Positions 4,346 to 26,316 of a stretch of 64,000 nt of DNA are shown piece by piece (position 1 is the first letter of the stretch; each line of letters opens with the position of its first letter). Position numbers and translations under genes: made by a program. Location of the stretch: IMG/VR virus record IMGVR_UViG_3300037502_003770, positions 62,001 to 126,000 of that record. One strand, given 5' to 3'. A model generated the notes under the pieces. It was not told the origin of the DNA. It made no database searches and saw only the letters and a list, made by a program, of their open reading frames with translations.

Positions 4346-4376
4346 TTTAACATTAAACAAAAACAATCAAACAATT

Positions 4377-6856: not shown

Positions 6857-7791
6857 ATGAAGGATGATATTTTTTTACAAATTGATATAAATACTGGTCA
6901 CACAAAATACTTTGAACGTGACAGTAAATTTAATTTAAAACTTTCTTTAATTATTATTTATTTTACAGAAGAGACTTTTTTGAATAAAAATGGTTTGTAT
7001 CTTTTACTTATAATGAAAGATGGTAAAACCATTTTCTTTAAAGATTTTAGACATCAAAAAATAATTTATTATGTTGGAAATTAGTATATATTATAATTAT
7101 ACAACTTACAATGAAATTTTTGATATTAGCGTATTGAAATCATGTCTTAATATACAGATAAAAGAATATATAGTTTTCCATGAATATATACAATCTTTTT
7201 CTAAGTTAATTTCATATTATAATAAAAATCTTCGTAACTTAAAATATTATGTTAATAAAAATTAAACTCTCAGAACATTGTTTTTATATTGAGGATTCTT
7301 TATACTCAAGACCTTTTACAAGAAGGAACTTTGCTTTTGATTTAATTTTAAATAATTTTAATGAAATAACATATTTTTTCAATAATAATTTTTATTTAAC
7401 ATGTAATATAAATAAAAATAATATTGAATATTTTGATATTTCACTAATGACTGGTATTAAAAATTTTCTTAATTTAACGCATTATATACCAACATAAATG
7501 TTAGACATTATTTTATATATAGATTGCTTTCAATATATTGAGGCAACAATAGTGGATATCGGTTCACCAAAAAAAATCTTATTTAGATTAGATTTAAATA
7601 ATAAAAATAGAATTTTTATTGAAATAAATAGATTTTCTTTAAAGAAAGGTTATTTTTCATTAATTAACTTTATAAAAGAACGCAAAATTTTATTTAATGA
7701 TTTAGATTATATAAATATTTTAGATTTAAAATATTATTTTAAAATATCAAATTCTATCAAAGAGAAAGATTCTCACCTTGCTTTTCTCTGA
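6857..7791 (+). repeat. Four tandem small YxE-leader / LKYY-type paralogous ORFs (6857, 7071, 7249, 7498)
   Basis: Shared Y-x-E leader and YY-containing ends; overlapping or abutting start/stop. Confidence 0.7.
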
Positions 7792-9072
7792 ATTTAACTG
7801 AAAAACTTTATAAGAATGTAAACATTCTTCAATAGAAACTCTATATCTCATTTTAGAGTTTTTTATTTTAAGGTAAACTTCCTTCCAATCCTTACAATTA
7901 ATAAAAGTTTCCTTCCATTGGTCTTTTATTAACAGATTTGGATAAAAATTTCCCTTATTTCTTTTAATTATACATTCTATTCCCCTGCGTAAAATTTCTA
8001 TTGAGGCATTAACAGCATCGCTGTAATCATATTGCAAATTGCCTATAATAGATGAATACGCAGGATTTATTCTGTATAATTTAATATCTTCAATAAATAA
8101 CCTTTTTGAAAGATTTTCTATAAAAAGATTTCTTTTCCAAAGGTTATTATTTTTTCTATTATATTTTCTTCCTTGACCAGCATTTTTACTTTTAAAAGAT
8201 AAGTCTTCAATAAAAACCGCTTTACAATTATAATACTTTGCAACTAAAGAAATCTTCTTAGAGATTTCAATTACTTCATGTTTAATTTTATTCTGAAAGT
8301 ACTTTGCTTCTTGAGAATCAGTTGATAATTTTAAGGAAATAAATTTATCAGTTAGTTCTTTTAAAGAAAACTCTTGGCAATGAATAAGTTTATCATCTTC
8401 CATAATAGAAATACCTATATTATTAGGATTCATATCTATCCCTAAATATCTTTCTTTTGAAGGGAGAAATTTCTTTTCTTGAGATTTAAATTCTTCAAAA
8501 GAAATATAAATGTATTTTAAATCAAGTTTTACAGAAAATTTATAACCATTCTCAAAACAATCAATATCATTTAATTCCTCAAGTTTAAATAATTCCTTTT
8601 TAATATTTCTTCTTAAAGAAGGGAGGTATAAAGGAATATGTAAATTTCTATTTACTTTAAAAGTGATTTTATTGTTATCAATAATATCTAATTCAAAATA
8701 AGTATTTCCTTTATTAGATGTTGTTCCTTGACAAGTAATAGGTGATAATTTATTTATTTTAAATTCATCATTACTTATCTTACCTTTACATCTTTCATAA
8801 AAGTTATTCTTTCCACCAAAAATAACTTTTTGATTTTGAAATCTTGTATGAACATCTTTTCCTTCTAAAATAGCGTATTCTATTTGTTTAGAATTAAGCT
8901 TTCCAATATTATTTAAACCTTTAAGTAAAGATTTCATTTCTTTAATATCTGTTATCCCTTCAAAATATCTATTATATGAAAACCTTATTACAGAAGAGAA
9001 TTGTTTCATTAAAGAATGGATTTCTTTTAATGAATTTACATCAGTAGTATAAGGCATTTTAATAGTTTTCAA
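7747..9072 (-). CDS. tnpB: TnpB-related RNA-guided nuclease, Zn-finger-less type, copy A (TTG start)
   Basis: RuvC-I YLGIDMN, RuvC-II FIEDL, INPAYSSIIG, RuvC-III SDAVNASIEI. Confidence 0.85.
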   Translation of the reverse strand: MKTIKMPYTTDVNSLKEIHSLMKQFSSVIRFSYNRYFEGITDIKEMKSLLKGLNNIGKLNSKQIEYAILEGKDVHTRFQNQKVIFGGKNNFYERCKGKISNDEFKINKLSPITCQGTTSNKGNTYFELDIIDNNKITFKVNRNLHIPLYLPSLRRNIKKELFKLEELNDIDCFENGYKFSVKLDLKYIYISFEEFKSQEKKFLPSKERYLGIDMNPNNIGISIMEDDKLIHCQEFSLKELTDKFISLKLSTDSQEAKYFQNKIKHEVIEISKKISLVAKYYNCKAVFIEDLSFKSKNAGQGRKYNRKNNNLWKRNLFIENLSKRLFIEDIKLYRINPAYSSIIGNLQYDYSDAVNASIEILRRGIECIIKRNKGNFYPNLLIKDQWKETFINCKDWKEVYLKIKNSKMRYRVSIEECLHSYKVFQLNSEKSKVRIFLFDRI

Positions 9073-9176
9073 AAGTCTTTAATGTTTATTATAAATAGTA
9101 AAAATAAATTATTTAGTATATAATTTTATAACGAATTTAATATATAAATGTATTTATAAAATAAACTTTTCAAAAA

Positions 9177-9398
9177 ATGAAAATATTTATAGGAAATTGG
9201 TTGTTCACTTATGAAGAAATTAATTTAAAAGGTAAAATTGAAGTTTACTTTTGTATTCATTCTTTATATAACAGTCTTTTTATTTATCAACAAAAATCAA
9301 AAAAATTAACTATTTTAACTATAAATGATAATATAAAAAGAATAAGTTTTAGTCGTTATACTCTTAATGTTCATAATTTAAACTATTATATAAACTAA
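9177..9398 (+). CDS. Small YxE-leader/LKYY family protein
   Basis: MKIFIGNWLFTYEE ... NLNYYIN. Confidence 0.6.
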   Translation: MKIFIGNWLFTYEEINLKGKIEVYFCIHSLYNSLFIYQQKSKKLTILTINDNIKRISFSRYTLNVHNLNYYIN

Positions 9399-10210
9399 TG
9401 AAAAAATTATTATTACCATCTTTTATAGAAAAACCTTCTTTTAAAATAATACTTATCTCAAGTATTATTCAGTTTGTTTTAGCTATTTTATTTCTTGAAT
9501 ATAATGGTAATGAGGTATTACCTAAACCAAGTAAAGTTTTACATTCTTTGTATAGTATAGTTATTAGTAAAGATTTTATCTTTGATTTTGTTGCAACATT
9601 ATCTATGATATTTAAGAGTATGTCGATAGCTATTTTAATATCATTATTCTTTATATATTTAAGTTTAATACCTATATTTAGAAATATGGCACAATTCATT
9701 TCTAAATTAAGGTTTTTAACTTACACAGGTTTAGTATTTGTATTTACTGTTATTTTTCATAATGGTTCAGACATTAAACTATCTCTATTCTTATTTGCTA
9801 TTATTCCTTATTTTGTAACATCTTTACTTTCTTATGTAAAAGATATACCACAAAAAGAATATGAGTTAGCTTATACTTTAAAATTTAATGAATTTAAAAC
9901 ATTATATGAAGTAGTAATAAAAGGTCAATTACATACAGTATTTGAAGTAATAAGACAAAACTTTGCAATAGCATGGATGATGATTACAAGCGTTGAAGCA
10001 TACTCTATGAGTGAAGGAGGTTTAGGAACCATGATGATTAAATCAAATAAATATTTAGATATGAATAGTGTTTTTGCTGTATTAATAATAATTTTAATAC
10101 TTGGAATATTCTTTGATTATTTATTTGATGTTTTAAAAGTGTTCTTCTTTCCATATACAAATATAAAAAGGTATGAAAATTTTTGGATAAATAAACTTTT
10201 TAAGAAATGA
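9398..10210 (+). CDS. ABC transporter permease (NitT/TauT/SsuC-like)
   Basis: Multiple TM segments, 'LPKPSKV', EAA-like region, 'AWMMITSVE...GGLG'. Confidence 0.85.
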   Translation: MKKLLLPSFIEKPSFKIILISSIIQFVLAILFLEYNGNEVLPKPSKVLHSLYSIVISKDFIFDFVATLSMIFKSMSIAILISLFFIYLSLIPIFRNMAQFISKLRFLTYTGLVFVFTVIFHNGSDIKLSLFLFAIIPYFVTSLLSYVKDIPQKEYELAYTLKFNEFKTLYEVVIKGQLHTVFEVIRQNFAIAWMMITSVEAYSMSEGGLGTMMIKSNKYLDMNSVFAVLIIILILGIFFDYLFDVLKVFFFPYTNIKRYENFWINKLFKK

Positions 10211-11352
10211 TAAATATCTTTACAGAAAACTTCTTTTATTTAGAAGGTGGTGTCGAAAACCCAATACTTCATATAAGAAAATATACTACTTTCTTATATT
10301 TTAATATAAATATTGTAGATTATTTTATAGAAAAACTACGTAATTTTAAAGTTGTTTTATATCATTTTGGTGAATATAATTTCTTTAATTTAAAATATGA
10401 TGCTCAAGTAAACATATTATATTATTTACAAATTAGTATAAAAAAATCTATTCTTAATAAACTTTCTTTTCCTTTAGCTAAGTTTATCTATGATTCTGCA
10501 CAAATAGGTGGTAAACTTAGTGGTAAAATAAAAGCTAGTCATGTACCAAATAAATACCTTTTTCCAAAATGATACAAATATTTAATGAAAACTTCTTTTA
10601 TTTAGAAGGTGGTTTACAAGATAATGTATATGATAGAATACTAAGTTGTTTTATCTACTTTAATTCTTTCATTCACGATTATTTTATTAGTAAATTTGAT
10701 AAAAATAAAGTAGAACTAAATTTATATCATTTTGAGATATATAATAAGATAGAACTAAATAGAAGTTATAAAAAAATTCCTTATGAAATAACATTTACTT
10801 TAAATAAATTTTTTGTAAAAAAAGCTTCTTTTTCTTTAGTAACAAATATTTACAAATATGCAATATCTTGTGGAAATATTAAGAAAACTAACTTACCAAA
10901 GAAATTTCAAAATTTATGTTAATAAAAATAGAATTTTCAAACAACAATAATTATTTTGAAACGGAAGTAGGAAGGTTTTATTTTCATTTTACTATAACCT
11001 TTTATTATGAATGTGTTCATATTCTTGAAAGTACATTAAATTATATTTATATTAAATATAATAATGAATATTTATATAAAAATTTTCAAAATATTAATAA
11101 ACTTAATTTAAAATATTATTAGTAATTATGTATACTTATATTATAATAATAGAATTATCAAACGATATTAATTATTATGAAAGAGAGCAATTTGCGAGTT
11201 TTTATTTTCATTTTGTAATATCTTGTATTTATTATGAATGTATGCGCTTTAATGAGAGTTTAATATTAATTTATATTGAACATAACGATAAAGATTTATA
11301 TAATTATTATAAAAATATTAACAAACTTAATTTAAAATATTACTTGTTTTAA
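10207..11352 (+). repeat. Four YxE-leader ORFs (10207/10569 pair; 10916/11128 LKYY pair) between permease and ATPase
   Basis: FxENFFYLEGG shared by the first pair; NINKLNLKYY shared by the second pair. Confidence 0.7.
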
Positions 11353-11370
11353 AAAAACCATTTTCAAAAA

Positions 11371-12162
11371 ATGATTACTTACAAAAAAGAAGAACTTATT
11401 TTATCAGTAAATGACCTTTCTGTAAAGTATGGTGATAAACAAATATTAAAAGATATTTCTTTTGATATTCATAATATTACAAGACCAAATCTTACTCAAG
11501 GACAAATCATATCTATTTGTGGTAGAAGTGGTTGTGGTAAAACATCTTTATTTAAAACTATATCAGGTTTTTTAAAACCAACAACAGGAACTATAAAAAT
11601 AGGTGTTGAACAAAAAGATGTAATTATGGGTGAGGTTGGTGTTATTCAACAAGATTATCCTTTATTTAATCATAGAACTGTTTATGAAAATCTTTCTCTT
11701 AGTTTAAAAAACGTTAAGACAGATAACGAAAAGAAAGAAAAAATACATCATTATTGCGATTTATTTAATCTTTTGGAACATTTAAATAAATACCCTTCAC
11801 AACTATCAGGTGGTCAAAGACAAAGAGTATCTATATTACAACAGGTATTAACTGAAAATAAGTTTATTCTTATGGATGAACCATTTTCAGGATTAGATGT
11901 TTTAATGAAAGATAAAGTTATTGAACTTATGTTAAAGGTTTCAAATCTTGATGAAATGAATACTTTAATAATAGTTTCTCATGATATTGAATCATCTTGC
12001 GCTATTTCTGATACTGTACATATTTTAGCAAATAAAGATAATACAGGCTCTACAGTTGTTAAATCATATGACTTTCTAAAAGAAAATCTTGCTTATAGAA
12101 AAGATATTAAAGATGATTATAATTTCAAAAGAATTATTAATGAAATAAAAAGTTTAATCTAA
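11371..12162 (+). CDS. ABC transporter ATP-binding protein (NitT/TauT-like)
   Basis: Walker A GRSGCGKT, signature LSGGQRQR, Walker B ILMDEPF, H-loop SHD. Confidence 0.95.
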   Translation: MITYKKEELILSVNDLSVKYGDKQILKDISFDIHNITRPNLTQGQIISICGRSGCGKTSLFKTISGFLKPTTGTIKIGVEQKDVIMGEVGVIQQDYPLFNHRTVYENLSLSLKNVKTDNEKKEKIHHYCDLFNLLEHLNKYPSQLSGGQRQRVSILQQVLTENKFILMDEPFSGLDVLMKDKVIELMLKVSNLDEMNTLIIVSHDIESSCAISDTVHILANKDNTGSTVVKSYDFLKENLAYRKDIKDDYNFKRIINEIKSLI

Positions 12163-14254
12163 TGCAGATACTTATTTATTTAGAAAGGCATTCAAAATAT
12201 TTTGAATATTATTATGATAATTCTTTTGAAGAAAGTTTAGTATTTGAAATTAGAACATCTTTTTCGTTTGAATTTGTTAAAAATTTTATAATAGAAATAT
12301 GGGAAAAAAATAATGATTCTTGGTATTATTATAATAAATTAAAATATTACGTATGTTAAATATAGGTATTATTATTTTAAATAATGATTTTCGTTATTAT
12401 GAATATTTTATTGGTATATTTGTTTTTGAAATTGATAATTTTGTTTTTTCTGAAACTTTTGAAATTGGTTATCATATTAGACTAGAAAGTTTAAGAAAAA
12501 ACGGTAAGCGTTATTTTATTGCAAATGTTTTTAATTTAAAATATTACTTATGATAAGAATAAATTTTAATAATGGTCTTTATGAAGAATGGTTACATAAT
12601 TGTAATATATATACTTTTGTTACTTTAGTGTATTATTTTGAATGTGTAAGCTTTTTAAATTCAAGTTTTCAAATTAATGAATTAAAATTTAAAGGGAATT
12701 ATTTTTATTATAAAAATATTAATCTTCTTAATTTAAAATATTACTTATGATTCATATTTTTTCTCTTAATAAAAACATTTTTTATTCAGAAAAATTTATA
12801 TTTAATGCTGATGTATTTCTTGTTCGTTTAAATATTAATAATTATGTTGAAAGTATTATGTTTGATTATAATTTTATTCTATTAGAAATGGAATATTCGA
12901 TGTTTATAGAAATTAATAAACTTCTTAAATTAAAATATTATTTAAGTTATTACTTATGGCTGTAAATATATATTTAACAAATTCTTCTTATAGGGAAAGA
13001 CAACATGAATATTATATTAGTAATATATTTCATAATGAAAATACTATTTTCAGTTCGATATATTCTTTACAATTAGCATCTTTAATAAAAAATAAAATCT
13101 TTTATTATTCAATAGTACAAAAATATAATACTGTTTTAAAATTAAAATATTATTTATGGGAATAAAAATTTGTTTTAACAATACTACATGGAATTTTTAT
13201 ATTGAATTTTTTTCTTATAAAGAGTGTATTTTCACTATTAAAATTTTATCTAATTTAATAACATCTACATTAATTGGAAATAAATTACAAGATGTTGTTT
13301 TAAAAATAAAAAATAATACACTATTAACAACTGATTCCATTAAAAACGTTACCACTAATGTTCTTAATTTAAAATTTTATATATGATAATAAGTATTAAA
13401 ATTTCTAATAATAATTTTTCTTATGACGAAAATATTTCCAGTATTTATGATAATACTATAATAACTAACTTATGGATTTTTAAATGTTTTGAAGATAGAA
13501 TTTTTATTAACACAATAAATCAAATAATAGAAATGATTTACTATATTACAATTAATAATTTCACAGTATACAGTAATAATAAATATTATAAAACTTAAAG
13601 AACTAAAATGAGAATAAATATTAAAATAAAAACATATTTCTTTAAATATGAAGAATTTAATTTAGTAGATGAAAATATGATAACTCATCTAGACCTTTCA
13701 AATATCTTTTATTTTGAAAGAAGTTATTTTTCTTTAAATGTAGATAATTATAAAATATATGCAATTTATAAAAATAGATTTCTTTATTTTGAAAATCGTG
13801 ATGTTAATTTACTTAAATTAAAATATTATCTATGAGATTACAAATTGTTTTTAATTTTGGAGGTTATTATAGTGAACTTGATAAATATGTAATTGTTTAC
13901 ATTTATCCAAAATATTATGATATTTATTTTAATGATGTATTTTATTATATTGATTCAAATATAAAATTAATAGAAGTAAGGCATTTAAACAGCAAAAAAT
14001 ATTCTCGTGAATATAAAGATTTCATTTTAAAATACTATACATAATGAAGATAGAAATTAAATCAACATATTTTACGTATTATGAAAGACTTGGTTATGAT
14101 GTTCAAAATTATTTTTCTTTAAATTTAGATTGGATTTTTTTTAGAAGATATAGATTTATATAAAAATGAATTTATTATGAATTTTGTAGGTTTTGGTCAA
14201 AAATGTTTTTATTCAAAAAATAGTAATTTACTTAAATTAAAATATTATATATAA
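12162..14254 (+). repeat. Tandem array of ten ~65-76 aa YxE-leader/LKYY paralogs (last one frameshifted)
   Basis: ORFs at 12162,12353,12550,12747,12956,13156,13383,13608,13832,14044; period about 200-230 bp. Confidence 0.8.
14044..14254 (+). pseudogene. LKYY-family ORF with +1 frameshift in T8 tract (14135-14142)
   Basis: Removing one T gives MKIEIKSTYFTYYE...NLLKLKYYI*. Confidence 0.7.
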
Positions 14255-14258
14255 AATA

Positions 14259-15581
14259 TTAAATTCTTTCAAAGACAAAAGTTTTCACCTTGCTTTTCTC
14301 TGAACTTAACTGAAAAACTTTATAAGAATGCAAACATTCTTCAATAGAAACTCTATATTTCAATTTAGAGTTTTTTATTTTAAGAGAAATTTCTTTCCAA
14401 TCTGTACATTTAATAAAAGTTTCCTTCCAACGGTCTTTTATTAACAAATTGGGATAAAAATTTCCCTTATTTCTTTTAATTATACATTCAATTCCTCTGC
14501 GTACAATTTCTATTGAGGCATTAATAGCATCAGTATAATCATGTTGCAAATTGCCTATAATAGACGAATACGCAGGATTAATTCTGTATAATTTAATATC
14601 TTCTATGAATAACCTTTTACTTAAATTTTCAAAAAACAGATTCCTTTTCCAAAGGTCATTATTTTTTCTGTTATATGTTTTTCCCTTACCAGCGTCTTTT
14701 TGTTTAAATGATAAATCTTCAATAAAAACTGCTTTACACTTATAATATTTTGCAAGTAATGAAATCTTTTTTGAAATTTCAATTACTTCATGTTTAATTT
14801 TATTCTGAAAGTACTTTGCTTTTTCAGAATCAGTAGATAGTTTTAAAGAAATAAATTTATCAGTTAATTCCTTTAAAGAAAACTCTTGACAATGAATAAT
14901 TTTATCATCTTCCATTATAGATATACCTATATTATTGGGATTCATATCTATTCCTAGATACCTTTCTTTTGAAGGAAATTTCTTTTCTTCATATTTAAAT
15001 TCTTCAAAAGATATATAAATATATTTTAAGTCAAGTTTTACACAAAATTTATATCCTTTCTCACCAAACTTTATATCATTTAATTCTTGAAGTTTAAATA
15101 ATTCTTTTTTAATATTCTTTCTTAAAGAAGGAAGGTATAAAGGTATATGCACATATTTATTTACTTTAAATATAATTTGATTATTATCAATTATATCTAA
15201 ATTAAAATAAGAATTTCCTTTATTATTAGTTATTCCTTGACACGTAATAGGTGAAAGTTTATTTATTTTAAATTCATCTTTACTTATTTTAGCTTTACAC
15301 CTTTCATAAAAATTATTCTTTCCTCCGAAAATAACCTTTTCATTTTGAAATCTTGTATAAACATCTTTTCCTTCTAAAATAGCATACTCTATTAGTTTAG
15401 AATTAAGTTTATTTATATTATTTAAATTAGAAAGTAAAAATTTTATTTTCTTAATATCAGATATCCCTTCAAAATATCTATTATAGGAGTACCTTACTAC
15501 AGAGGAGAATTGTTTCATCAAAGAATGAATTTCTTTTAATGAAGTATCATCTGTAGTGTAAGGCATTTTAATAGTTTTCAA
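14259..15581 (-). CDS. tnpB: TnpB-related RNA-guided nuclease, copy B
   Basis: Close paralog of 7747-9072; D/E/D RuvC residues present. Confidence 0.85.
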   Translation of the reverse strand: MKTIKMPYTTDDTSLKEIHSLMKQFSSVVRYSYNRYFEGISDIKKIKFLLSNLNNINKLNSKLIEYAILEGKDVYTRFQNEKVIFGGKNNFYERCKAKISKDEFKINKLSPITCQGITNNKGNSYFNLDIIDNNQIIFKVNKYVHIPLYLPSLRKNIKKELFKLQELNDIKFGEKGYKFCVKLDLKYIYISFEEFKYEEKKFPSKERYLGIDMNPNNIGISIMEDDKIIHCQEFSLKELTDKFISLKLSTDSEKAKYFQNKIKHEVIEISKKISLLAKYYKCKAVFIEDLSFKQKDAGKGKTYNRKNNDLWKRNLFFENLSKRLFIEDIKLYRINPAYSSIIGNLQHDYTDAINASIEIVRRGIECIIKRNKGNFYPNLLIKDRWKETFIKCTDWKEISLKIKNSKLKYRVSIEECLHSYKVFQLSSEKSKVKTFVFERI

Positions 15582-15627
15582 AAGTCTTTAATGTTTATTA
15601 TAAATAGTAAAAATAAATATAATTTTT

Positions 15628-15657
15628 TTAACAAATCATTTTAAATCAAGTATTATA
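15628..15657 (+). promoter_or_regulatory. Phage-type promoter upstream of the tRNA
   Basis: TTAACA-aatcattttaaatcaa(16)-GTATTATA. Confidence 0.7.
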
Positions 15658-15671
15658 TAAACAAACACAAT

Positions 15672-15745
15672 GGACCTATAGCGCAACTGGTCAGAGCAGC
15701 TGACTCATAATCAGCAGGTTTCAGGTTCAAATCCTGATAGGTCCA
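15672..15745 (+). tRNA. tRNA with CAT anticodon, most likely tRNA-Ile2 (lysidine, reads AUA); CCA not encoded
   Basis: Cloverleaf GGACCTA/TAGGTCC, GCTGA-CTCATAA-TCAGC, TCAGG-TTCAAAT-CCTGA. G1-C72 excludes initiator; C4-G69/C5-G68 as in Ile2. Confidence 0.9.
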
Positions 15746-15763
15746 CTTTAAAATTTTATAAAA

Positions 15764-16369: not shown

Positions 16370-16621
16370 AAAAATGAACTCTATTTTAATAAAAGGAATT
16401 TATACTGAGTATGATGATATTTTTTTAATAGAATATCATTTTAAAAAATTTAAAGTTTCATTAAAAAATGATAGTTTTCATCTAACTTTAAAACTAGGTT
16501 CATTCACTAAACTTTATATTGAAGATAGTTTTAAACAAGTACATAGATTTTTTAAATTAACAGAAAAAGAATTACGAGAACTAGTTAAAACAATAACATT
16601 AACATCTTTTAAACAAAAATA

Positions 16622-17761: not shown

Positions 17762-17778
17762 ACAAAACAATTAATAAT

Positions 17779-18048
17779 ATGTTCGCAGAAGCAGGTAAAG
17801 GAAAAACTCACGATTTAGTTGAAAGTATAAATAAACTTTCTAATAAAAAAGATAAGGAATTTTTAAAAGATAATATCCTTAAAAAAGGACTTCCTTTAAA
17901 AGTAAATTATTTTTCTATTAGTTTAGAAACTATTGAAGAACTTAAAGCTTCAAAAATGAAAATTGATTCTAAACAAGAATTAGTAACTGAATGGGATGGA
18001 AAAAAACCAGTTAAAGGATTTTTAACTTATCTTATTATAAGTAAGTAA
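17779..18048 (+). CDS. Hypothetical protein
   Basis: 89-aa ORF followed by hairpin at ~18055-18086. Confidence 0.55.
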   Translation: MFAEAGKGKTHDLVESINKLSNKKDKEFLKDNILKKGLPLKVNYFSISLETIEELKASKMKIDSKQELVTEWDGKKPVKGFLTYLIISK

Positions 18049-18150
18049 AATTATAACCATAAGAATTAATTTTCTTATGGGTTTTTATTTTAACAATATA
18101 TCAAATATAATAGTATTATAATTGTTCTTAAACTTTAACATCTATAAAAA

Positions 18151-19299
18151 ATGGTTCTTTCTGAAATAACAACTTCTTTAATTAAAGAAAATTCTCTAAT
18201 TGAGAATCCTGTTTCTGTTAATAAAATTGATTTATCAAAACATAAATCAAAACAATATGAATTATATGATTCACTATTAAGTTCATTAATTGAAAATGAT
18301 ATAATCAACTTCAATATAATTGAACCAAAAAAAGGTTTATCATATTTTAATTTATTTAAAAAGACCTTAAATAAATTAAGGGAAGAAAATAGATTAAACG
18401 CTTGTATTCCAAATTTAAAGATACAATTTAAATTTCTTTCTTGCAACGTAAATGATTTATATAATCTTTTAATAGAATTTGCTGATACAAATCTTTTGGT
18501 ATCTCATCCAACATTATTAAAAGATTTCACACCTGAATTACTAAAAAAATATATTACATATTGCTTAGATAATTCTATCGTACATTCTATTGTTAGGATA
18601 TTATATGTCTTTGACAATAAATTATCTCTTGATAAAGATTATTATGAAGATGTTATTGTTAAACTTTTGGAAAGTAATTCCTTAATAAACAATTCTTCTC
18701 TTAGAGAAATACATCCTTTCTTATTAAAAAATAAATCTACATATACTAAACTATGTTATTTATTTTTAAATCAAGATAAAAATAATATTAAATATGTAAT
18801 ACCTCAATTAATATCTTCTAAAGAAGATTATCAATCATTAGTGGATAAATCTATTGAAGGAAGTTTTACTAAGTTTAATTTATCTTATGCTGATAAAAGA
18901 TTCCTTTTAAAAGAAATAGATGTTACTTTAAGTAAGAATTATTACTTTAATATAACTGTTCTAATAAATGATAAAAGGTATGTGGATAATTCATTTAATA
19001 ATGATACAGGTTTAATACCTCATTTTGATAATAAAGTAAATAAACTAATGCTTTATCTTCATGATGTAAAAGAAAATAAAGTAATTAGTTCAGTAGATAT
19101 TTTTAATACAGATGAACTCAAATCTGGGTATGACTGGTTTAAATACTTGGATGCTTCAACCTTTGTTAAATTTGATAAAGCTCAAAATGAACTTGACCAA
19201 ATGAAAAATAGAGCTTTAAAAGATAAAGAGAAAACCAAAGGGGGTATTCATGGTATTAAACGTGGTTCTAACGTTACCAAATCTAAAAAACGTAAATAA
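18151..19299 (+). CDS. Hypothetical protein with basic C-terminal tail
   Basis: 382-aa ORF with its own promoter (18090-18120) and terminator (~19315-19349). Confidence 0.6.
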   Translation: MVLSEITTSLIKENSLIENPVSVNKIDLSKHKSKQYELYDSLLSSLIENDIINFNIIEPKKGLSYFNLFKKTLNKLREENRLNACIPNLKIQFKFLSCNVNDLYNLLIEFADTNLLVSHPTLLKDFTPELLKKYITYCLDNSIVHSIVRILYVFDNKLSLDKDYYEDVIVKLLESNSLINNSSLREIHPFLLKNKSTYTKLCYLFLNQDKNNIKYVIPQLISSKEDYQSLVDKSIEGSFTKFNLSYADKRFLLKEIDVTLSKNYYFNITVLINDKRYVDNSFNNDTGLIPHFDNKVNKLMLYLHDVKENKVISSVDIFNTDELKSGYDWFKYLDASTFVKFDKAQNELDQMKNRALKDKEKTKGGIHGIKRGSNVTKSKKRK

Positions 19300-19363
19300 C
19301 TATTAACAACCTTCAAAACCGTTTTAACTTTGATTAGAACGGTTTTTTTAAAATAAAAACTTT

Positions 19364-19993
19364 ATGGTAAACAATTTTAAACAAGTTAAAAACATATTAT
19401 CTTTTGAAGATAAAAATGATTTCTATTTAGTAGAAATTATTAAAAGAAAGAAAGATAATTCTCATGATTCTTCTTTTAAAAAGAATGAAAAACATATAAA
19501 AAGGTTTTATATTAATAATTTAGAAGATTTTGATGAGAAACAAAACTCAATAATAGAAACTTGTATTAGAAATAATGCAAGGGCGTATATCAAACTTAAT
19601 AAACGCAATCATAAACATATAGCAAAAGTTATGAATGTAAAACTCGCTGAAATTTTACTTCATGATAATAACGATGAATATAAAAGACTCGAAACTTTAT
19701 ATTCAAAAGTAACAGGAAAATATTTTGTAAATAATGATAAAAAGTTTATTATAGATTTAGATGAAAAAGACCTTCATTTAAAAGAAGAAATACTTACATA
19801 TTTAAAAACTCATAATGACTTTAAATTTTCTTTACATAAAGAGGATTTAGTAATAGATACATTCCCATCAAATACTGGTCTTCATATTGTTACTAAAAAA
19901 TTTAATTTAAATATATTTAAAAAGAAATATCCAAATATCGATGTACATTCTGATAATATGGTCTTACTTTTCTTTAATAATCAACCTTTATAA
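19364..19993 (+). CDS. Conserved Bacteroidota-phage protein, possible AEP/primase-like fold
   Basis: 'DFYLVEIIKRKKDN','RAYI','IIDLD','SNTGLH' resemble the DxD / GxH motifs of AEP-like proteins. Confidence 0.45.
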   Translation: MVNNFKQVKNILSFEDKNDFYLVEIIKRKKDNSHDSSFKKNEKHIKRFYINNLEDFDEKQNSIIETCIRNNARAYIKLNKRNHKHIAKVMNVKLAEILLHDNNDEYKRLETLYSKVTGKYFVNNDKKFIIDLDEKDLHLKEEILTYLKTHNDFKFSLHKEDLVIDTFPSNTGLHIVTKKFNLNIFKKKYPNIDVHSDNMVLLFFNNQPL

Positions 19994-20068
19994 GAGATAA
20001 TTTTTTAACAAAAAAGAATCTTTCTTGTAATATAAATCAATTCAATGTTCAACTAAACAAAAAAAACA

Positions 20069-20665
20069 ATGAAAAACTTTCTAATTCTTTTAATGCTTGT
20101 ATTTACTTTCAGCATTACAACTTTTGCACAAACTCAAACTACCACAACACCTGATTATGGTTTTGCTAAAGGTCAAATTACTATTGGTGGTAATCTAATG
20201 GGTTACGCTGTTAAAACTAGTAGTCCCTCAATTACTGAATCAGCTTTTGGTGGTGGCTTAAATTTAGGTTATATGTTATCAGCTAAACATAATATTGCTT
20301 TAATGACAGATTATGTGAGTACATCTGATAATTCAAGACAAAATACTTTTGGTTTAAGTTATACTTTTTATCCACTAAATCAAAGAGTCGCACCATATTT
20401 ACAAGTTAACGCAGTAAGATTTAATAGAACAGAAAATAGTGGTCTTGTTAGTTCTATTACTTCAGAAACGGAAACCACAGTTAGAGGTTATTCAGCTTAT
20501 CTAAGTGCTGGAGTTTGTTACAGGGTACATACAGACTTTTGGATTTCAACTCAGTTTAACTTCTTACAATACCAAAGATATGATGATAGTGATTATACTG
20601 TAACTGAATTTGGTACATTACAAGCACCATTTACTTTAGGAGTACAATATTTCTTGAGTAGATAA
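20069..20665 (+). CDS. Outer-membrane beta-barrel protein (8-stranded OmpA/PorT-like)
   Basis: Signal peptide (TFA|Q), alternating beta pattern, terminal LGVQYF. Confidence 0.75.
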   Translation: MKNFLILLMLVFTFSITTFAQTQTTTTPDYGFAKGQITIGGNLMGYAVKTSSPSITESAFGGGLNLGYMLSAKHNIALMTDYVSTSDNSRQNTFGLSYTFYPLNQRVAPYLQVNAVRFNRTENSGLVSSITSETETTVRGYSAYLSAGVCYRVHTDFWISTQFNFLQYQRYDDSDYTVTEFGTLQAPFTLGVQYFLSR

Positions 20666-20742
20666 TACTTAAAAAACAATAACTTACTTAATAAAAAGTC
20701 TATTTTAAAAGAATAGGCTTTTTATTTTTAAATAAATATTTT

Positions 20743-22365
20743 ATGAAAATAGAAAACAGAATAGAAAAAGCTATTTCTTTATACGGAAATAATTCAACTG
20801 AAAATTTAAATGATTTTAATTTTTTTAATTGTAGTAGAGAAGAATTAATTTCATCAAAAAAACACTACGAATATATAAGTGGTCGTGATAATTCAATTCC
20901 AGAAAATGAAGTTGAATTATATATAAAAATATTGGGAAAAGAAAAAATAAAATCTTATATTTTAGAAGATTTAAAAAATATAGATAATTTAAATTATTAT
21001 TTCAGAAGGAATTTAGAAAATTTAGATTTTACTATTTCAGATTTAATAAACAATAGACAGTATTTACCAGAATTGTTAGATTATGATAATTCATATAGAT
21101 TTTATAGTTTATTATCTAATAGTTTAAAAGAAAATAATTTTGATGAGGTTGTTTTATTTTTATTAGAATATATATTTATTAATAATGATTATTGGCAAAC
21201 ATATTATACTTTTTATGATACTTTTTTATCTAAAAATCCAGATTTATTTAAAAGAAATAAAGATATTCTTTTAGAAAATCTAATACAATCAATAAATAGT
21301 CAAAATATTTTAAATATTTTTTCTTTAATTATATGTAATATTGAATTAGATTTATCTACTGTAAAAGAAATTTATAACTTAATAAATTTATACGATTTAA
21401 GTTTACCAAAATTTATTTACGATTCATTTGATAACTCACGTTCTTTAGAATATGATAAAAGAAATAATAACCCATTAAAAAATAACTTAACTTTATTTTA
21501 TGATTATTATCTATCATTAGATAGAGATAAAAATATTATAAAATATTCTGACCATATTTTTTATGACAATCATATTGTAAATCAAATTTTTATCGAAAAA
21601 TTAAAAGAAATTTACACAAAAGAGTATATTATTGAAAATCCTAATTCTTTAAAAAATAATAAGATTCTAAATATGTTAATTAATAATAAAATATTAAATA
21701 CTGATATTTATAATCTTTTATTAGAAAACAATATTGAAAATGTGTTTACTGTTGGATATAGTTATCGTTTTCATGATAATTATAAATTTATAAAAATAAA
21801 AATTTATGAAGTATTAGATATTTATGTCAATAATAAATATTATATAAATTCATTTAAAAGTGAAACTATGTATAGTATTTTAAATAATACATTAAATAAA
21901 TTTTCTAAAATTGAATTAGTTTCTATTTTAGAAAAATATTTTATACCAATATTTGATTATTTTACTGAGATTGAAAAGAAAGAAAGAGAAAATAGGGTTT
22001 ATTCTGATGAGCTTTTATATGATGATAGAGTTGATGTTGAGGAATATAAAAATGATTTTTACAATTCAAAAAATGATTTTATTTTTTTAGTTGAATGTTT
22101 CATAATCAATATATTGAATATTAAACAACAATATGAATTAATAACCAAATATGATTATAAATTAATTGATGTTATAAAAAAACCAAAAACAAGTTTATTT
22201 TTAAAACTTGCTTCCTTTGATAATAATTATTTTATGAGATATTTATTTCTTTTAAAACTTAACAATTATGAGAATATTTCGTATTATAGAAAGGAACAAA
22301 GAAAAACTAAAAGTAAAAGTTTAAAACATTCAGGTGATGCCATGTTGGTAGCAAAATCTTGTTAA
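20743..22365 (+). CDS. Hypothetical low-complexity (N/I/Y/K-rich) protein
   Basis: 540-aa ORF. Confidence 0.55.
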   Translation: MKIENRIEKAISLYGNNSTENLNDFNFFNCSREELISSKKHYEYISGRDNSIPENEVELYIKILGKEKIKSYILEDLKNIDNLNYYFRRNLENLDFTISDLINNRQYLPELLDYDNSYRFYSLLSNSLKENNFDEVVLFLLEYIFINNDYWQTYYTFYDTFLSKNPDLFKRNKDILLENLIQSINSQNILNIFSLIICNIELDLSTVKEIYNLINLYDLSLPKFIYDSFDNSRSLEYDKRNNNPLKNNLTLFYDYYLSLDRDKNIIKYSDHIFYDNHIVNQIFIEKLKEIYTKEYIIENPNSLKNNKILNMLINNKILNTDIYNLLLENNIENVFTVGYSYRFHDNYKFIKIKIYEVLDIYVNNKYYINSFKSETMYSILNNTLNKFSKIELVSILEKYFIPIFDYFTEIEKKERENRVYSDELLYDDRVDVEEYKNDFYNSKNDFIFLVECFIINILNIKQQYELITKYDYKLIDVIKKPKTSLFLKLASFDNNYFMRYLFLLKLNNYENISYYRKEQRKTKSKSLKHSGDAMLVAKSC

Positions 22366-22381
22366 CAATAAAAATCTTTTT

Positions 22382-22654
22382 ATGGAAAAAATAGAACTGC
22401 AAGAAGTGGAAATTATGGATGAAGATACTATTTCTTCAAAACAAATAGTCCTTTATAATGACGATTTCAATACATTTGATAATGTTATTAAATGTTTAAT
22501 GGTTTATTGTAAACATGTGTATGAACAAGCACTACAATTTGCTATGCAAGTGCATGAAAAAGGTAGATGTTCCGTTAAAGAGGGTTCATATAAAGAATTA
22601 AAACCTATTTGCGAGGCTTTACTTGAGAAAGGTTTATCAGCTCAAATAGAATAA
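22382..22654 (+). CDS. clpS: ATP-dependent Clp protease adaptor ClpS
   Basis: LYNDDFNTFDNV ... EQALQFAMQVHEKGRC; Bacteroidota-type short form. Confidence 0.92.
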   Translation: MEKIELQEVEIMDEDTISSKQIVLYNDDFNTFDNVIKCLMVYCKHVYEQALQFAMQVHEKGRCSVKEGSYKELKPICEALLEKGLSAQIE

Positions 22655-23261
22655 AAGATATATGAAACATAACATACAACAAGAAAAATTTTCTTTATTT
22701 ATTGAAAAAAATTTCATAATAGAATATGAAAAAAATACCACATCATATAGAATAGATGTTTATAATGATGTAAAAAAATATGATAAATATCTTATTGACA
22801 AATATATTAAAACGGATGATACTTTTCGAGTACTAAACTTATTTCAAAATTTAAAATTAGAATATTATAATGGTTTATTATCATTAAATTTTGAAAGAAA
22901 AGAACATATTTATATAAATTATAGTTCTCTTGAATATGGTACTCAACATAATAAAGAAAAATTCCTAAACGAAGTAATTAAATATTTACCGCAAACAGAT
23001 TTAACTAAAAAAATAGATTTTTCTAAAAGAAATATTTTTGGTAGTACAAATCATGTATTTATTAAAGACATACCTTTTTTTAATGAAAAATTTATTCCAT
23101 TAAATGTAGAACCTTATGTAAAAAATGCTATTACTAATAATAATTTTTTAATAAATTATATATAGTAAGGATATTATTCACCGTTTTAACAAAAAACATT
23201 ATTTCTTGTAGTATAAATCAGTTCAAACAAAACAACAATTAAACAAAAACAATTTTCTCTT

Positions 23262-24071
23262 ATGAAAAGATTCCTTTTCCTCTTATGTACAATCATTACT
23301 TTAGTATCGATGCAATCATGCGAAATGATTGAATCTGGATATGTTGGTATCAAAGTTAATAAAACTGGTGATAATCAAGGTGTTCAAAACATAGTAGAAG
23401 TTACTGGGTGGTGTTTCTATAATCCAATTACAAGTAGTATTTACGAGTTTCCAACACACGTTCAACACGTAGATTATGAAGCTTTTGAAGTAGGTGCTAA
23501 AGATGCTGCATTATTTACTATTAAACCATCATTAAATTATATGGTTTCACCAAGTAAAGTACCATTTATCTTTGTTAAATATAGAAAACCTTTAAATGAA
23601 ATTGAACAACAATTTATCAGAACTACATTATTTGAAGCTTATAAAATTTCAGCAAACAGGTATAGTTCAGATAGTTTACTTAAATCAAGACAAATCTTCG
23701 AGGATAATGTAAGAAAAATCTTGGTTGATTCTTTAGGAAAAGATGGTTTTATTTTAAATCAACTAACTTGTAATATCTCAATTCCAAAAAGTTTGCAAGA
23801 ATCTATTGAAAGAAAAAATAATAGCGTTCAGGCATCAATGCAAGCAGAGAATGAAGTTAAAACAGCTGAGGCTAATGCCAGAATTGCAATTGCCCAAGCC
23901 AATGGAGAAGCACAGGCTGCATTAATCGCAGCGAAAGCTGAGGCTGAAGTAAATAGACTACGTCAACAAAGTTTAACACCTTTGCTTATTCAACAGCAGT
24001 ATATTCAAAAATGGAATGGTGTTTTACCTCAATATGGACAAGTTCCTTCTTTAATGAAACAAGTTCAATAA
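23262..24071 (+). CDS. SPFH/band-7 (prohibitin-like) lipoprotein
   Basis: Lipobox MQSC, 'IESGYVGIKV', AEA-rich coiled coil, 'QYIQKWNGVLP'. Confidence 0.9.
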   Translation: MKRFLFLLCTIITLVSMQSCEMIESGYVGIKVNKTGDNQGVQNIVEVTGWCFYNPITSSIYEFPTHVQHVDYEAFEVGAKDAALFTIKPSLNYMVSPSKVPFIFVKYRKPLNEIEQQFIRTTLFEAYKISANRYSSDSLLKSRQIFEDNVRKILVDSLGKDGFILNQLTCNISIPKSLQESIERKNNSVQASMQAENEVKTAEANARIAIAQANGEAQAALIAAKAEAEVNRLRQQSLTPLLIQQQYIQKWNGVLPQYGQVPSLMKQVQ

Positions 24072-24090
24072 GAAGAAATAAAATTATATT

Positions 24091-24125
24091 AAAAGACTTC
24101 TATTTTAAAAGATAGAAGTCTTTTT
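24091..24125 (+). terminator. Intrinsic terminator
   Basis: aaaagacttctat...atagaagtcttttt. Confidence 0.75.
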
Positions 24126-24139
24126 AAATAAAGATAAAT

Positions 24140-24935
24140 ATGTTTATAAAAATAATTATAACAACAAATACATTTTTCTATTCTGAATGTATTACTAGTA
24201 TATATGGGAATGGTAGTAGTTTATTATATTGTGAATATATCAATAGTCAATACTGTTTTAATTTTGAAAAAGCTACTGAATGGAATGCTTATTTCAAAAT
24301 TAATGAAAATTTATGGATTACTTTTCAATTACCTATGTCAGATTTTCATTTAAATGATGTGTATTTATTTTTAGACTTTCGTGATAAACATTCATATAAT
24401 AATTTATCTAATTTTTTTAAAAAATTTAAACCAAATGAATATAAATATTAATACAGAACATTGTTTTTATCAAGAAATTAATTATTATTTAGAATATAAT
24501 ATTAAACCAATTTTTATTTTAATAAATAAGTTTTTTTCTGAGGAATGGTTTCTTCCTTTAATTGGTATAACTTATTTTTATAATAATTTATTTCATAATA
24601 AAACAGTTAAATCTTTAAGAAAAACTCATCTTTATGAATATATATTATTAAGTTTTTTACGTATTAGGATGAAACTTGATAAATTAAATAAAACCACAAT
24701 AAAACAAAGTGTTGATAATTTTATTCATCATACACATATAACATATTATACAGAAAATATTTGTAAAGAATTAATAAAATATTATGGTATTGAAATTATT
24801 AAATTTTTACCAAATAAATTCTTTACTAAAAAACTGTATATTTTTATGTATGATTTATTAGGCAATGAATTGCTTTCTTTACATAAAATATCAAATTCTT
24901 TCAAAGACAAAGGTTTTCACCTTGCTTTTCCTTGA
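24140..24935 (+). repeat. Two YxE-leader ORFs (24140; 24435, whose 3' end runs into tnpB copy C)
   Basis: MFIKIIITTNTFFYSE; MNININTEHCFYQE. Confidence 0.6.
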
Positions 24936-26219
24936 ATTTAACTCAAAAACTTTATAAGAATGTAAACATTCCTCAATAGAAACTCTATATTTCAATCCAG
25001 AGTTTTTTATTTTAAGGGAAACTTCCTTCCAATCCTTACATTTAATAAAAGTTTCCTTCCAACGGTCTTTTATTAATAGATTTGGATAAAAATTTCCCTT
25101 ATTTCTTTTAATTATACATTGAATTCCTCTGCGTACAATTTCTATCGAGGCATTAACAGTATCAGTATAATCATGTTGCAAATTGCCTATGATAGATGAA
25201 TACGCAGGATTTATTCTGTATAATTTAATATCTTCAATAAATAATCTCTTTGAAAGGTTCTCTACAAACAAATTTCTTTTCCAAAGGTTATTATTTTTCC
25301 TGTTATATGTTGTTCCTTTACCAGCATTTTTATCTTTAAAAGATAAATCTTCAATAAAAACAGCTTTACAATTATAATATTTTGCAATCAAAGAAATCTT
25401 TTTTGAAATTTCGATTGTTTCAAATTGTATTTTATTTTGAAAGTACTTTGCTTTATCAGAAGAAGAATCTAATTTTAAAGAAATAAATTTATCTATTAAC
25501 TCTTTTAAAGAAAATTCTTGACAATAAATAAGTTTATCATCTTCCATAATAGAAATACCTATATTATTAGGATTCATATCTATTCCTAGATATCTTTCTT
25601 TTGAAGGGAGAAATTTCTTTTCTTCATTTTTAAATTCTTCAAAAGAAATATAAATATATTTTAAATCAAGTTTAATAGAAAATTTATAACCTTTTTCAAA
25701 ATTAGGTTTTACATCATTTAATTCTTGAAGTTTATACAAATCTTTTTTAATATTTTTCCTTAAAGAAGGTAAATATAAAGGTATATGTAATTTTTTATTT
25801 ACTTTAAAAATGATTTGATTATTATCAATTATATCTAATTCAAAATAAGAATTTCCTCTATTATTGGTAACACCTTGACACGTAATAGGTGAAAGTTTAT
25901 TTATTTTAAATTCATCTTTACTTATATTTCCTTTACATCTTTCATAAAAATTATTCTTTCCACCAAAAATAACCTTTTGATTTTTAAATCTTGTGTGAAC
26001 ATCTTTTCCTTCTAAAATAGCGTATTCTATTAATTTAGAATTTAAATCTTGAATATTATTTAAACCTTTAAGTAAAGACTTTATTTTTTTAATATCAGTT
26101 ATTCCTTCAAAATACCTATTATAAGAAAACCTTACTACAGAAGAGAATTGTTTCATTAAAGAATGAATTTCTTTTAATGAATTTACATCAGTTGTATAAG
26201 GCATTTTAATAGTTTTCAA
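24891..26219 (-). CDS. tnpB: TnpB-related RNA-guided nuclease, copy C
   Basis: Close paralog of copies A and B; GIDMN / FIEDL / TDTVNAS. Confidence 0.85.
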   Translation of the reverse strand: MKTIKMPYTTDVNSLKEIHSLMKQFSSVVRFSYNRYFEGITDIKKIKSLLKGLNNIQDLNSKLIEYAILEGKDVHTRFKNQKVIFGGKNNFYERCKGNISKDEFKINKLSPITCQGVTNNRGNSYFELDIIDNNQIIFKVNKKLHIPLYLPSLRKNIKKDLYKLQELNDVKPNFEKGYKFSIKLDLKYIYISFEEFKNEEKKFLPSKERYLGIDMNPNNIGISIMEDDKLIYCQEFSLKELIDKFISLKLDSSSDKAKYFQNKIQFETIEISKKISLIAKYYNCKAVFIEDLSFKDKNAGKGTTYNRKNNNLWKRNLFVENLSKRLFIEDIKLYRINPAYSSIIGNLQHDYTDTVNASIEIVRRGIQCIIKRNKGNFYPNLLIKDRWKETFIKCKDWKEVSLKIKNSGLKYRVSIEECLHSYKVFELNSRKSKVKTFVFERI

Positions 26220-26316
26220 AAGTATTTAATGTTTATTATAAATAGTAAAAATAAATTATTCTTTTAACAAATAGAAGTCTTTTCTGTATTATAAAATAAT
26301 AAACATTTATAAAAAA

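What the first reader, a model, noticed from the sequence alone, without database searches (positions are those of the whole stretch)
7740..26256. Three Zn-finger-less TnpB paralogs whose homology ends 7 bp past the stop; two abut the LKYY motif
Seen: RuvC D/E/D residues are present, there is no CxxC finger, and a ~75-aa extension follows RuvC-III. Shared sequence ends at TAAAATAT (7740, 14252, 24884). All three sit at 3' ends of YxE-leader genes, and copies A and B lie directly after TTAAAATATTAT. The flank of copy B shares TAATTTACTTAAATTAAAATATTAT with the end of ORF 13608. Established: the TnpB omega-RNA overlaps the gene's 3' end and the guide comes from the flank. Inference: the scaffold lies almost wholly in coding sequence, and the guides could recognise several array members, which might drive homing or recombination in the array. 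AT-richness makes chance matches plausible.
Basis: partly seen in the sequence, partly recalled or inferred. Interest (0 to 1): 0.65.

Follow-up and report, generated by a model that had tools for sequence, protein, structure and literature searches.

The report
Zinc-finger-less TnpB elements in huge phage
Three intact copies of a small mobile element in a 313-kb phage each encode a TnpB-type nuclease lacking the usual zinc finger, and their probable guide-RNA scaffold lies almost wholly inside the gene's last 210 bases; this is a poorly described branch of a known family, not a new kind of system.

Summary
Three minus-strand units (7740-9109, 14252-15618, 24884-26256) are 88-90% identical. 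Each holds one intact ORF of 440-442 aa with a TTG start.

Homology stops 7 nt past the stop codon, at ...GAATTTGATATTTTA. That end is the conserved right-end motif of a large, mostly phage-borne family. The family includes ISCaje4 of Campylobacter phage CP220 and copies in Lak megaphages.

The protein folds like TnpB/Cas12f (Z 15-17). It keeps the RuvC D/E/D triad and lacks the zinc finger, as do all 120 family representatives examined. It also has a roughly 70-aa C-terminal domain of its own.

The last ~220 nt form a conserved RNA structure. Across 17 relatives, 42 pairs are 96% paired and 17 show compensatory changes; the two helices that align across 31 relatives give 13 of 17 pairs. The closing helix joins codons FQ(L/Q)NS to the terminal motif. 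Synonymous change falls two- to three-fold in this stretch. So the omega-RNA scaffold very probably lies in coding sequence.

Relatives carry an IS607-type serine recombinase upstream. The window copies have none.

The idea that the guides drive homing or recombination in the gene array is not supported. Copy B's flank resembles other array junctions only because it sits in the array, and no TAM could be shown.

The parts
7740..9109 (-). Element copy A (1370 bp): left end ATTTATTTTTAC... at 9109, right end ...GATATTTTA at 7740
   Evidence: Three-way alignment with flanks; probe matches
7747..9072 (-). Copy A tnpB-like ORF, 441 aa, TTG start; RuvC D208/E284/D347 (numbered from MPY...)
7740..7957 (-). 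Copy A predicted omega-RNA scaffold. Long stem-loop 7957-7869; hairpin 7861-7836; closing helix 7798-7790 paired with 7754-7746; 3' tail AUUUUA ending at 7740
   Evidence: RNAalifold and pair counts; synonymous suppression; single-sequence fold z -3.2
7720..7739 (-). Copy A flank that would serve as guide (AAATAATATTTTAAATCTAA); it contains the reverse complement of the LKYY motif
   Evidence: Position directly after the scaffold end; guide role is inferred by analogy with TnpB
14252..15618 (-). Element copy B (1367 bp)
14259..15581 (-). Copy B tnpB-like ORF, 440 aa, TTG start
14252..14469 (-). Copy B predicted omega-RNA scaffold
14232..14251 (-). Copy B flank / putative guide (TATATAATATTTTAATTTAA); matches other array junctions with 1-3 mismatches
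24884..26256 (-). Element copy C (1373 bp); a related phage contig (L080) carries a copy at the same place
24891..26219 (-). Copy C tnpB-like ORF, 442 aa, TTG start
24884..25101 (-). Copy C predicted omega-RNA scaffold
24864..24883 (-). Copy C flank / putative guide (TGTAAAGAAAGCAATTCATT); unique in the window
23165..23262 (.). Empty site: a related phage (L083) carries a fourth copy of this element here, between the Band_7 gene and its upstream neighbour

Best explanation
Identity: the three units are non-autonomous, TnpB-only descendants of an IS607-type insertion sequence. They belong to a large, mostly phage-borne clade that includes ISCaje4 of Campylobacter phage CP220.

Protein: each unit encodes an intact TnpB-type RuvC nuclease under purifying selection. 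This nuclease has lost the zinc-finger (TNB) insert and gained a C-terminal domain of about 70 aa.

RNA: its own mRNA 3' end folds into an omega-RNA scaffold of about 220 nt. All but the last 7 nt of that scaffold is coding sequence. The scaffold ends at the element's right terminus (...AUAUUUUA), so the 16-20 nt of phage DNA beyond it would serve as the guide.

What is shown: identity, fold, catalytic triad, exact ends, conserved RNA structure, presence/absence polymorphism between related phages, and loss of the recombinase.

What is inferred by analogy with studied IS605/IS607 TnpB: the RNP cuts DNA that matches the flank next to a TAM. In a phage this would most plausibly act as a homing or retention nuclease against co-infecting relatives that lack the insertion.
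For: Homologues:
- tblastn and protein searches find ISCaje4 TnpB (36-38% identity), Lak megaphages (35-38%, several copies per genome) and a 462-kb uncultured phage (53%).
- The family has 1370 clusters at 50% identity.

Protein:
- The AF2 model has pLDDT 93.9. It matches Cas12f at Z 17.2, Cas12k at Z 16.8, ISDra2 TnpB at Z 14.9, ISFba1 TnpB at Z 14.2 and Fanzor2 at Z 12.7, over model residues 1 to about 370.
- The D/E/D triad is conserved and the zinc finger is absent in 120 of 120 representatives.
- dN/dS is 0.12-0.26 between copies.

Ends:
- The right end falls at a conserved TATTTTA motif in all paralog comparisons.

RNA structure:
- Across 31 sequences, 17 pairs are 95% paired and 13 show compensatory changes. 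No shuffle out of 500 reached this, and slid controls gave 25-51%.
- Across 17 sequences, 42 pairs are 95.7% paired and 17 show compensatory changes.
- Synonymous differences fall from 0.2-0.35 to 0.08-0.10 in codons 391-420 in two independent groups. dS roughly halves in the last 80 codons.

Transposase and mobility:
- A full serine-recombinase TnpA (Pfam Resolvase, E 3e-21) lies directly upstream in 7 relatives. Remnants remain in others, including CP220. None is present in the window.
- A related phage has an extra copy where the window is empty. Another related phage lacks copies A and B.
Against: - There is no expression, RNA-end or cleavage data, so the guide and TAM are inferred.
- Pfam TnpB models do not hit the protein, and NCBIfam TIGR01766 scores only E 1e-3, below its cut-off.
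- The zinc finger/TNB domain that helps load substrate in studied TnpB/Cas12 enzymes is missing, so activity could differ.
- No clear TAM emerges. The (A)ATA or TA before the left end could equally be part of the element.
- The copies differ at dS 0.3-0.45, so there is no sign of recent movement within this genome.
- The one clean filled/empty pair is not a simple insertion. About 75 bp of target is duplicated on both sides, which standard IS607 transposition does not produce.
- The covariation comes from related coding sequences, so some of the signal reflects codon constraints.
Confidence: 0.75

Rival explanations
1. Domesticated nuclease. The copies no longer move at all. The phage keeps them as RNA-guided weapons against competing phages or host DNA, or as regulators. 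Being antisense to neighbouring genes, their 3' RNA could also act on the convergent mRNAs.
For: There is no transposase in the window. The copies are old (dS 0.3-0.45) yet under purifying selection. Eight of nine close copies lie antisense to their neighbours, and neighbouring ORFs run 45 nt into the right end.
Against: The ends are sharp and conserved. Related phages differ in presence or absence at several sites. Relatives still carry TnpA. The catalytic triad is kept, unlike known nuclease-dead TnpB-derived regulators.
Confidence: 0.15
2. Guides derived from the LKYY junctions let copies A and B cut other members of the small-gene array. This would drive homing into, or recombination among, array members.
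For: A and B both sit 2-3 nt after the same 12-mer, which occurs only 8 times in 64 kb. Two of three copies landing there by chance is very unlikely. B's 20-nt flank matches 10 other sites with up to 3 mismatches against 3.2 expected, and 8 of them are array junctions.
Against: The match follows trivially from B lying inside the array. A's flank is not enriched. The two insertion points differ by 1 nt relative to the motif. No other array junction is occupied. The candidate TAM is absent 5' of all array matches. There is no homology on the left-end side to support copying by recombination.
Confidence: 0.08
3. Not RNA-guided. Having lost the zinc finger, the protein is a structure-specific RuvC-like nuclease or resolvase. 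The conserved 3' structure would then be an mRNA stability or translation element.
For: PHROGs gives weak Holliday-junction-resolvase hits. RuvC resolvases match the core at Z 11-12.
Against: The whole 370-residue WED-REC-RuvC architecture matches TnpB/Cas12f, not only the RuvC core. The RNA's closing helix uses the exact element terminus, as in known omega-RNAs. The family is associated with IS607 TnpA.
Confidence: 0.05

Closest known systems
ISCaje4 (Campylobacter phage CP220; filed in 2010 under IS200/IS605, PMC2853527)
   Same: Same protein clade: 36% identity over the full length, with the same missing zinc finger and the same C-terminal domain. It is phage-borne and has a related right-end motif, TTTATATCTTA.
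   Different: ISCaje4 keeps an 81-aa remnant of the resolvase-like TnpA upstream, while the window copies have none. Its motif lies 24 nt past the stop codon, against 7 nt here.
IS607-family TnpB with omega-RNA (for example the Clostridium botulinum IStron, bioRxiv 10.1101/2023.11.20.567912)
   Same: Relatives have a serine-recombinase TnpA upstream. The omega-RNA comes from the tnpB 3' end and stops at the right end. The same dinucleotide appears to precede the left end and close the right end, here TA in 11 of 14 sites.
   Different: The core and ends are AT-rich rather than GG with a TGGG TAM. There is no zinc finger. The scaffold is almost entirely coding. No group I intron is present, and no Rfam family matches.
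ISDra2 and ISFba1 TnpB, and Cas12f (solved structures)
   Same: The overall fold matches (Z 14-17 over about 300 aligned residues) and the RuvC triad is shared.
   Different: Sequence identity is only 10-14%. The TNB zinc-finger insert is absent. There is an extra C-terminal domain of about 70 aa that does not align with these structures.
Zinc-finger-less TnpB branches in the TnpB/Cas12 survey (PMC10691335), such as RIIIr-4
   Same: That survey reports that the C4 zinc finger is lost in some large TnpB branches, and that RIIIr-4 lacks it and is enriched in viruses.
   Different: RIIIr-4 has His in place of the RuvC-III Asp. Here the Asp is kept in 118 of 120 sequences. I could not determine which named branch this clade belongs to.

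Membership tests
TnpB (OMEGA RNA-guided nuclease) | Split RuvC domain with a conserved D/E/D triad | tested here: met
   D208 and E284 are present in 120 of 120 sequences and D347 in 118 of 120
TnpB (OMEGA RNA-guided nuclease) | WED-REC-RuvC fold like solved TnpB/Cas12f structures | tested here: met
   The AF2 model has pLDDT 93.9. It matches Cas12f at Z 17.2, ISDra2 TnpB at Z 14.9 and ISFba1 TnpB at Z 14.2
TnpB (OMEGA RNA-guided nuclease) | C4 zinc finger (TNB) between RuvC-II and RuvC-III | tested here: not met
   None of 120 sequences has two CxxC motifs. The gap is only 14-17 aa in all but two sequences. The literature says this feature is lost in some branches, so it is typical rather than strictly defining.
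TnpB (OMEGA RNA-guided nuclease) | Match to curated family models (Pfam OrfB_IS605 / TNB, TIGR01766) | tested here: not met
   There is no Pfam hit. TIGR01766 scores 19 bits against a cut-off of 32. The fourth, canonical TnpB in the window does match these models.
TnpB (OMEGA RNA-guided nuclease) | Structured RNA overlapping the gene's 3' end and stopping at the right end | tested here: met
   Shown by covariation, slid and shuffled controls, synonymous suppression and exact end positions. This is computational only.
TnpB (OMEGA RNA-guided nuclease) | Guide- and TAM-dependent DNA cleavage | not testable with these tools
   Requires an experiment
IS607 family | Serine-recombinase TnpA upstream of tnpB | tested here: not met
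   None is present in the window. Seven relatives have a full copy and others have remnants. The window copies are therefore derived and non-autonomous.
IS607 family | No inverted repeats or target duplication; the same core dinucleotide at both junctions (usually GG) | tested here: inconclusive
   TA precedes the left end in 11 of 14 sites and closes the right end, but the boundary was chosen after the fact. Two relatives have long flanking duplications.
RIIIr-4 TnpB branch (PMC10691335) | RuvC-III Asp replaced by His | tested here: not met
   Asp is kept in 118 of 120 sequences
CRISPR-Cas12 | Adjacent CRISPR array | tested here: not met
   No repeat-spacer array is present in 5000-29000

The most novel reading that the evidence does not exclude
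This phage-borne, zinc-finger-less TnpB clade may spread between and within large phage genomes by RNA-guided cutting followed by recombination with the donor, not by classical IS607 transposition. Such a route would leave long direct duplications of the target that begin exactly at the right end. These are seen at about 75 bp in one relative and 250-300 bp in another. It would favour sites between a gene's stop codon and the -35 box of the next promoter. It could also explain why two window copies sit at equivalent junctions of a repeated gene array.
Probability: 0.15. Interest if true: 0.7.

Novelty: new member of a known kind. Interest (0 to 1): 0.42.

Why it matters
It places three unannotated phage genes that no Pfam model detects into TnpB, and gives exact element ends. 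It also gives a testable scaffold and guide boundary for a large clade (1370 clusters at 50% identity) of compact nucleases, about 436 aa, that work without the zinc finger.

The clade is a clear case of one stretch of DNA serving two roles. Roughly 70 codons also encode RNA helices, and amino-acid choices co-vary to keep the base pairs. In the conserved hairpin, Ser/Leu is paired with Arg codons, and Asn/Met with Val/His.

If the RNP proves active, it could be a candidate compact genome editor and a model for how phages carry RNA-guided homing nucleases.

Tried and rejected
- A sequence search of the PDB with one protein found nothing. A profile search gave only weak Cas12j RuvC hits.
- The first AF2 run, using 30 close sequences, was poor (pLDDT 56). 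It was replaced by a run with 120 sequences.
- Rfam gave no family at gathering threshold and only noise at E up to 10.
- An exact scan of metagenome contigs for the left-end 28-mer found nothing.
- A scan of viral contigs used a mis-specified left-end pattern. It returned 112 unrelated AT-rich matches plus the fourth TnpB, and was discarded.
- A search for orphan scaffolds or solo ends in the window found only the three copies, plus a 25-nt left-end-like block at 1974-1998.
- A search for flanking direct repeats around A, B and C found nothing significant.
- The attempt to define a TAM was ambiguous. (A)ATA or TA before the left end could belong to the element. The related contig L201 lacks copies A and B, but is too diverged (about 80%) to give exact empty sites.
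- The TTGTTAAAA block next to several left ends is the native -35 box of the downstream promoter, not part of the element.
- No CRISPR-like array and no terminator after the right end were found.
Full report
**Context.** The window is about 21% G+C, and nearly all of its genes are on the + strand. It is bases 62001-126000 of IMG/VR contig UViG_3300037502_003770, a 312,694-bp phage contig. Only four sizeable ORFs lie on the minus strand. Three of them are the finding.

**The observation.** The ORFs 7747..9072, 14259..15581 and 24891..26219 encode proteins of 441, 440 and 442 aa.
- Aligned with 350-450 nt of flank on each side, the copies share one sharp unit of about 1.37 kb at 88-90% identity.
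- The unit starts at ATTTATTTTTACTATTTATAATAAAC, 37 nt before the TTG start, at 9109, 15618 and 26256.
- It ends at ...AGAATTTGATATTTTA, 7 nt past the stop codon, at 7740, 14252 and 24884.
- The TTG start gives MKTIKMPY, which matches the family N-terminus MKTIKLPY.
- TTAAAATATTAT ends 2 nt before copy A and 3 nt before copy B. It occurs 8 times in the window against 1.5 expected.
- The 25-nt identity with the end of ORF 13608 is real.

**The protein.**
- Pfam finds nothing. NCBIfam gives a sub-threshold TnpB hit.
- tblastn against phage records finds a 462-kb uncultured phage (53% identity), Lak megaphages (35-38%, up to five places per genome) and the annotated ISCaje4 TnpB of Campylobacter phage CP220 (38%).
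- The large protein collection holds more than 870 relatives, mostly 432 aa, often named IS605 OrfB by JGI. A profile search finds 1370 clusters at 50% identity with E of 1e-3 or better.
- In 120 diverse representatives, D208 and E284 are invariant and D347 is present in 118. None has two CxxC motifs.
- Only 14-17 residues in all but two sequences separate the Y of YSSxxGN from D347. A tail of 79-105 residues follows D347.
- Cas12j has about 30 residues where this family has 8.
- With the 120-sequence alignment, AlphaFold2 gives pLDDT 93.9.
- Foldseek and VIA-align return Cas12f (Z 17.2), Cas12k (Z 16.8), ISDra2 TnpB (Z 14.9), ISFba1 TnpB (Z 14.2) and Fanzor2 (Z 12.7). These cover model residues 1 to about 366-376. 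The last 60-70 residues are confidently folded but mostly unaligned.
- dN/dS between copies is 0.12-0.26.

**The right end.**
- In the subgroup at 55% identity, the stop codon is followed by 29 conserved nt, ttatttaatttattgaattttgtatttta. After that the flanks are unrelated.
- More distant members end in ...TTTGTATTTTA...TTTATATTTTA or ...GATATTTA, 17-53 nt after the stop.
- The window copies have the same motif, GAATTTGATATTTTA, fused onto the stop codon.
- Paralog pairs in eight contigs lose homology at this point, within 0-4 nt in most pairs. So do nine close copies from other samples.

**The RNA.**
- The last 261 nt fold better than shuffles. The z-score is -3.2 for copy A and -7.3 for a relative.
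- On 31 sequences down to about 33% protein identity, RNAalifold finds two helices. One is an 8-bp hairpin inside the codons KNSKxxYRVS. The other is a 9-bp long-range helix pairing the codons of FQ(Q/L)NS with the terminal motif.
- That long-range helix is GUUAAAUUC with GAAUUUGAU in the window and GCAAAAUUC with GAAUUUUGU in the 55% group.
- Overall, 95% of cells are paired and 13 of 17 pairs have changes on both sides. No shuffle out of 500 reaches this, and sliding the partner by 1-3 columns gives 25-51%.
- On 17 better-aligned sequences, a further long stem-loop appears. This gives 42 pairs, 95.7% paired, with 17 compensatory.
- Amino acids follow the pairing: UCU/AGA changes to UUG/CGA, and AAC..GUU changes to AUG..CAU.
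- Synonymous differences among identical residues drop from 0.2-0.35 to 0.08-0.10 in codons 391-420 in both groups. dS roughly halves in the last 80 codons.
- In copy A the scaffold spans about 7957 to 7740, and only 7 nt of it is non-coding.
- No Rfam family matches. No orphan scaffold exists in the window. No terminator follows the end.

**The transposase.**
- ISCaje4 has an 81-aa resolvase-like remnant upstream.
- Seven relatives have a full 195-aa serine recombinase (Pfam Resolvase, E 3e-21) overlapping the tnpB start. Others keep N- or C-terminal remnants. The window has none.
- The clade is therefore IS607-derived, with repeated loss of TnpA.
- TA precedes the left end in 11 of 14 independent sites and closes the right end. 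This recalls the shared core dinucleotide of IS607 (GG, with TAM TGGG and scaffold end UCGG; bioRxiv 10.1101/2023.11.20.567912). The boundary was chosen after the fact, however.

**Mobility.**
- A related phage (about 90% identical; loci L080-L083) has a copy at the position of copy C. It also has an extra copy next to the Band_7 gene, where the window (23165-23262) is empty.
- A more distant relative (L201) lacks copies A and B.
- The copies in the window differ from each other as much as from copies in other phages (dS 0.3-0.6). There is therefore no sign of a recent burst.

**Insertion sites.**
- Several left ends lie 6-9 nt upstream of the -35 box (TTAACA) of a sigma-70-like promoter for the next + strand gene. 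For copy B this is the tRNA-Met promoter.
- L201 shows that this promoter is native. The preference may reflect tolerated positions rather than mechanism.

**The array hypothesis.**
- Copy B's 20-nt flank matches 10 other sites with up to 3 mismatches against 3.2 expected, and 8 of them are array junctions. Copy A's flank is not enriched. Copy C's flank is unique.
- No array match has the candidate (A)ATA on its 5' side.
- Two of three copies lying within 3 nt of a 12-mer present 8 times in 64 kb is very unlikely by chance. Some site preference is therefore likely, but its cause is open.

**Unexplained.** Two relatives carry long direct duplications of the target, starting exactly at the right end. 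One is about 75 bp at 94% identity (L083). The other is about 250-300 bp at 89% identity (L082). IS607 and IS605 transposition do not produce such duplications.

**Comparison with the literature.**
- ISCaje4 was catalogued in 2010 (PMC2853527).
- The TnpB/Cas12 survey notes that the zinc finger is lost in some large branches. It also notes that RIIIr-4 lacks it and is virus-enriched. RIIIr-4, however, has His for the RuvC-III Asp, unlike this clade (PMC10691335).

**Verdict.** These are new members of a known but poorly described TnpB branch. The coding-embedded scaffold is the most useful new detail.

Noticed in passing
window 727-1953 (-), with 1965-2011: A fourth TnpB gene (408 aa) of the canonical kind, matching Pfam OrfB_IS605 and the Cas12f1-like TNB zinc finger. 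Its upstream region shares a 25-nt identical block (AAATAATTTATTTTTACTATTTATA) with the left end of the zinc-finger-less elements. This could be a shared promoter or a shared recombinase site.
   Followed up: partly
window 10916-14250, also 7249-7791 and about 9170-9390: A tandem array of at least 12 small, very diverged paralogous genes (65-97 aa). Most end in LKYY(L), with the stop overlapping the next start (TTATGA). Their function is unknown and they have no Pfam hit. The member next to copy B appears split by a stop.
   Followed up: partly
L082 2651-2948 with 4316-4597; L083 2872-2948 with 4319-4395: Long direct duplications of target DNA flank two related insertions. They are about 250-300 bp at 89% identity and about 75 bp at 94% identity, and both begin exactly at the right end. 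In L082 the duplicated piece is part of a GIY-YIG/T5orf172 gene. Standard IS607/IS605 insertion does not explain this.
   Followed up: partly
window 15622-15746: A tRNA-Met gene (15672-15746) has a TTAACA-N17-TATTAT promoter. The left end of copy B lies 9 nt upstream of the -35 box. Similar promoter-like blocks recur in many intergenic regions of the window.
   Followed up: partly
window 9398-10210 and 11371-12162: The phage carries an ABC-transporter permease (NitT/TauT type, best relatives 60-65% identical) and an ABC ATPase, interleaved with the small-gene array. This may be an auxiliary metabolic module.
   Followed up: no
L201 5806-7080: A related phage has a canonical TnpB inserted between two genes whose window counterparts (17779-18048 and 18151-19299) have nothing between them. 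Both TnpB types are therefore polymorphic among these phages.
   Followed up: no
L051 2787 onward: In a distant relative, the right end abuts what reads like the start of a tRNA gene (not checked with a tRNA finder). That relative also has many in-frame TAG codons, which suggests a recoded phage.
   Followed up: no
window 7740-7791 and 24884-24935 (+): The + strand genes next to copies A and C read 45-50 nt into the element's right end. Their last 15-17 residues (KISNS(F/I)K...) are therefore supplied by the antisense strand of the tnpB 3' end.
   Followed up: no
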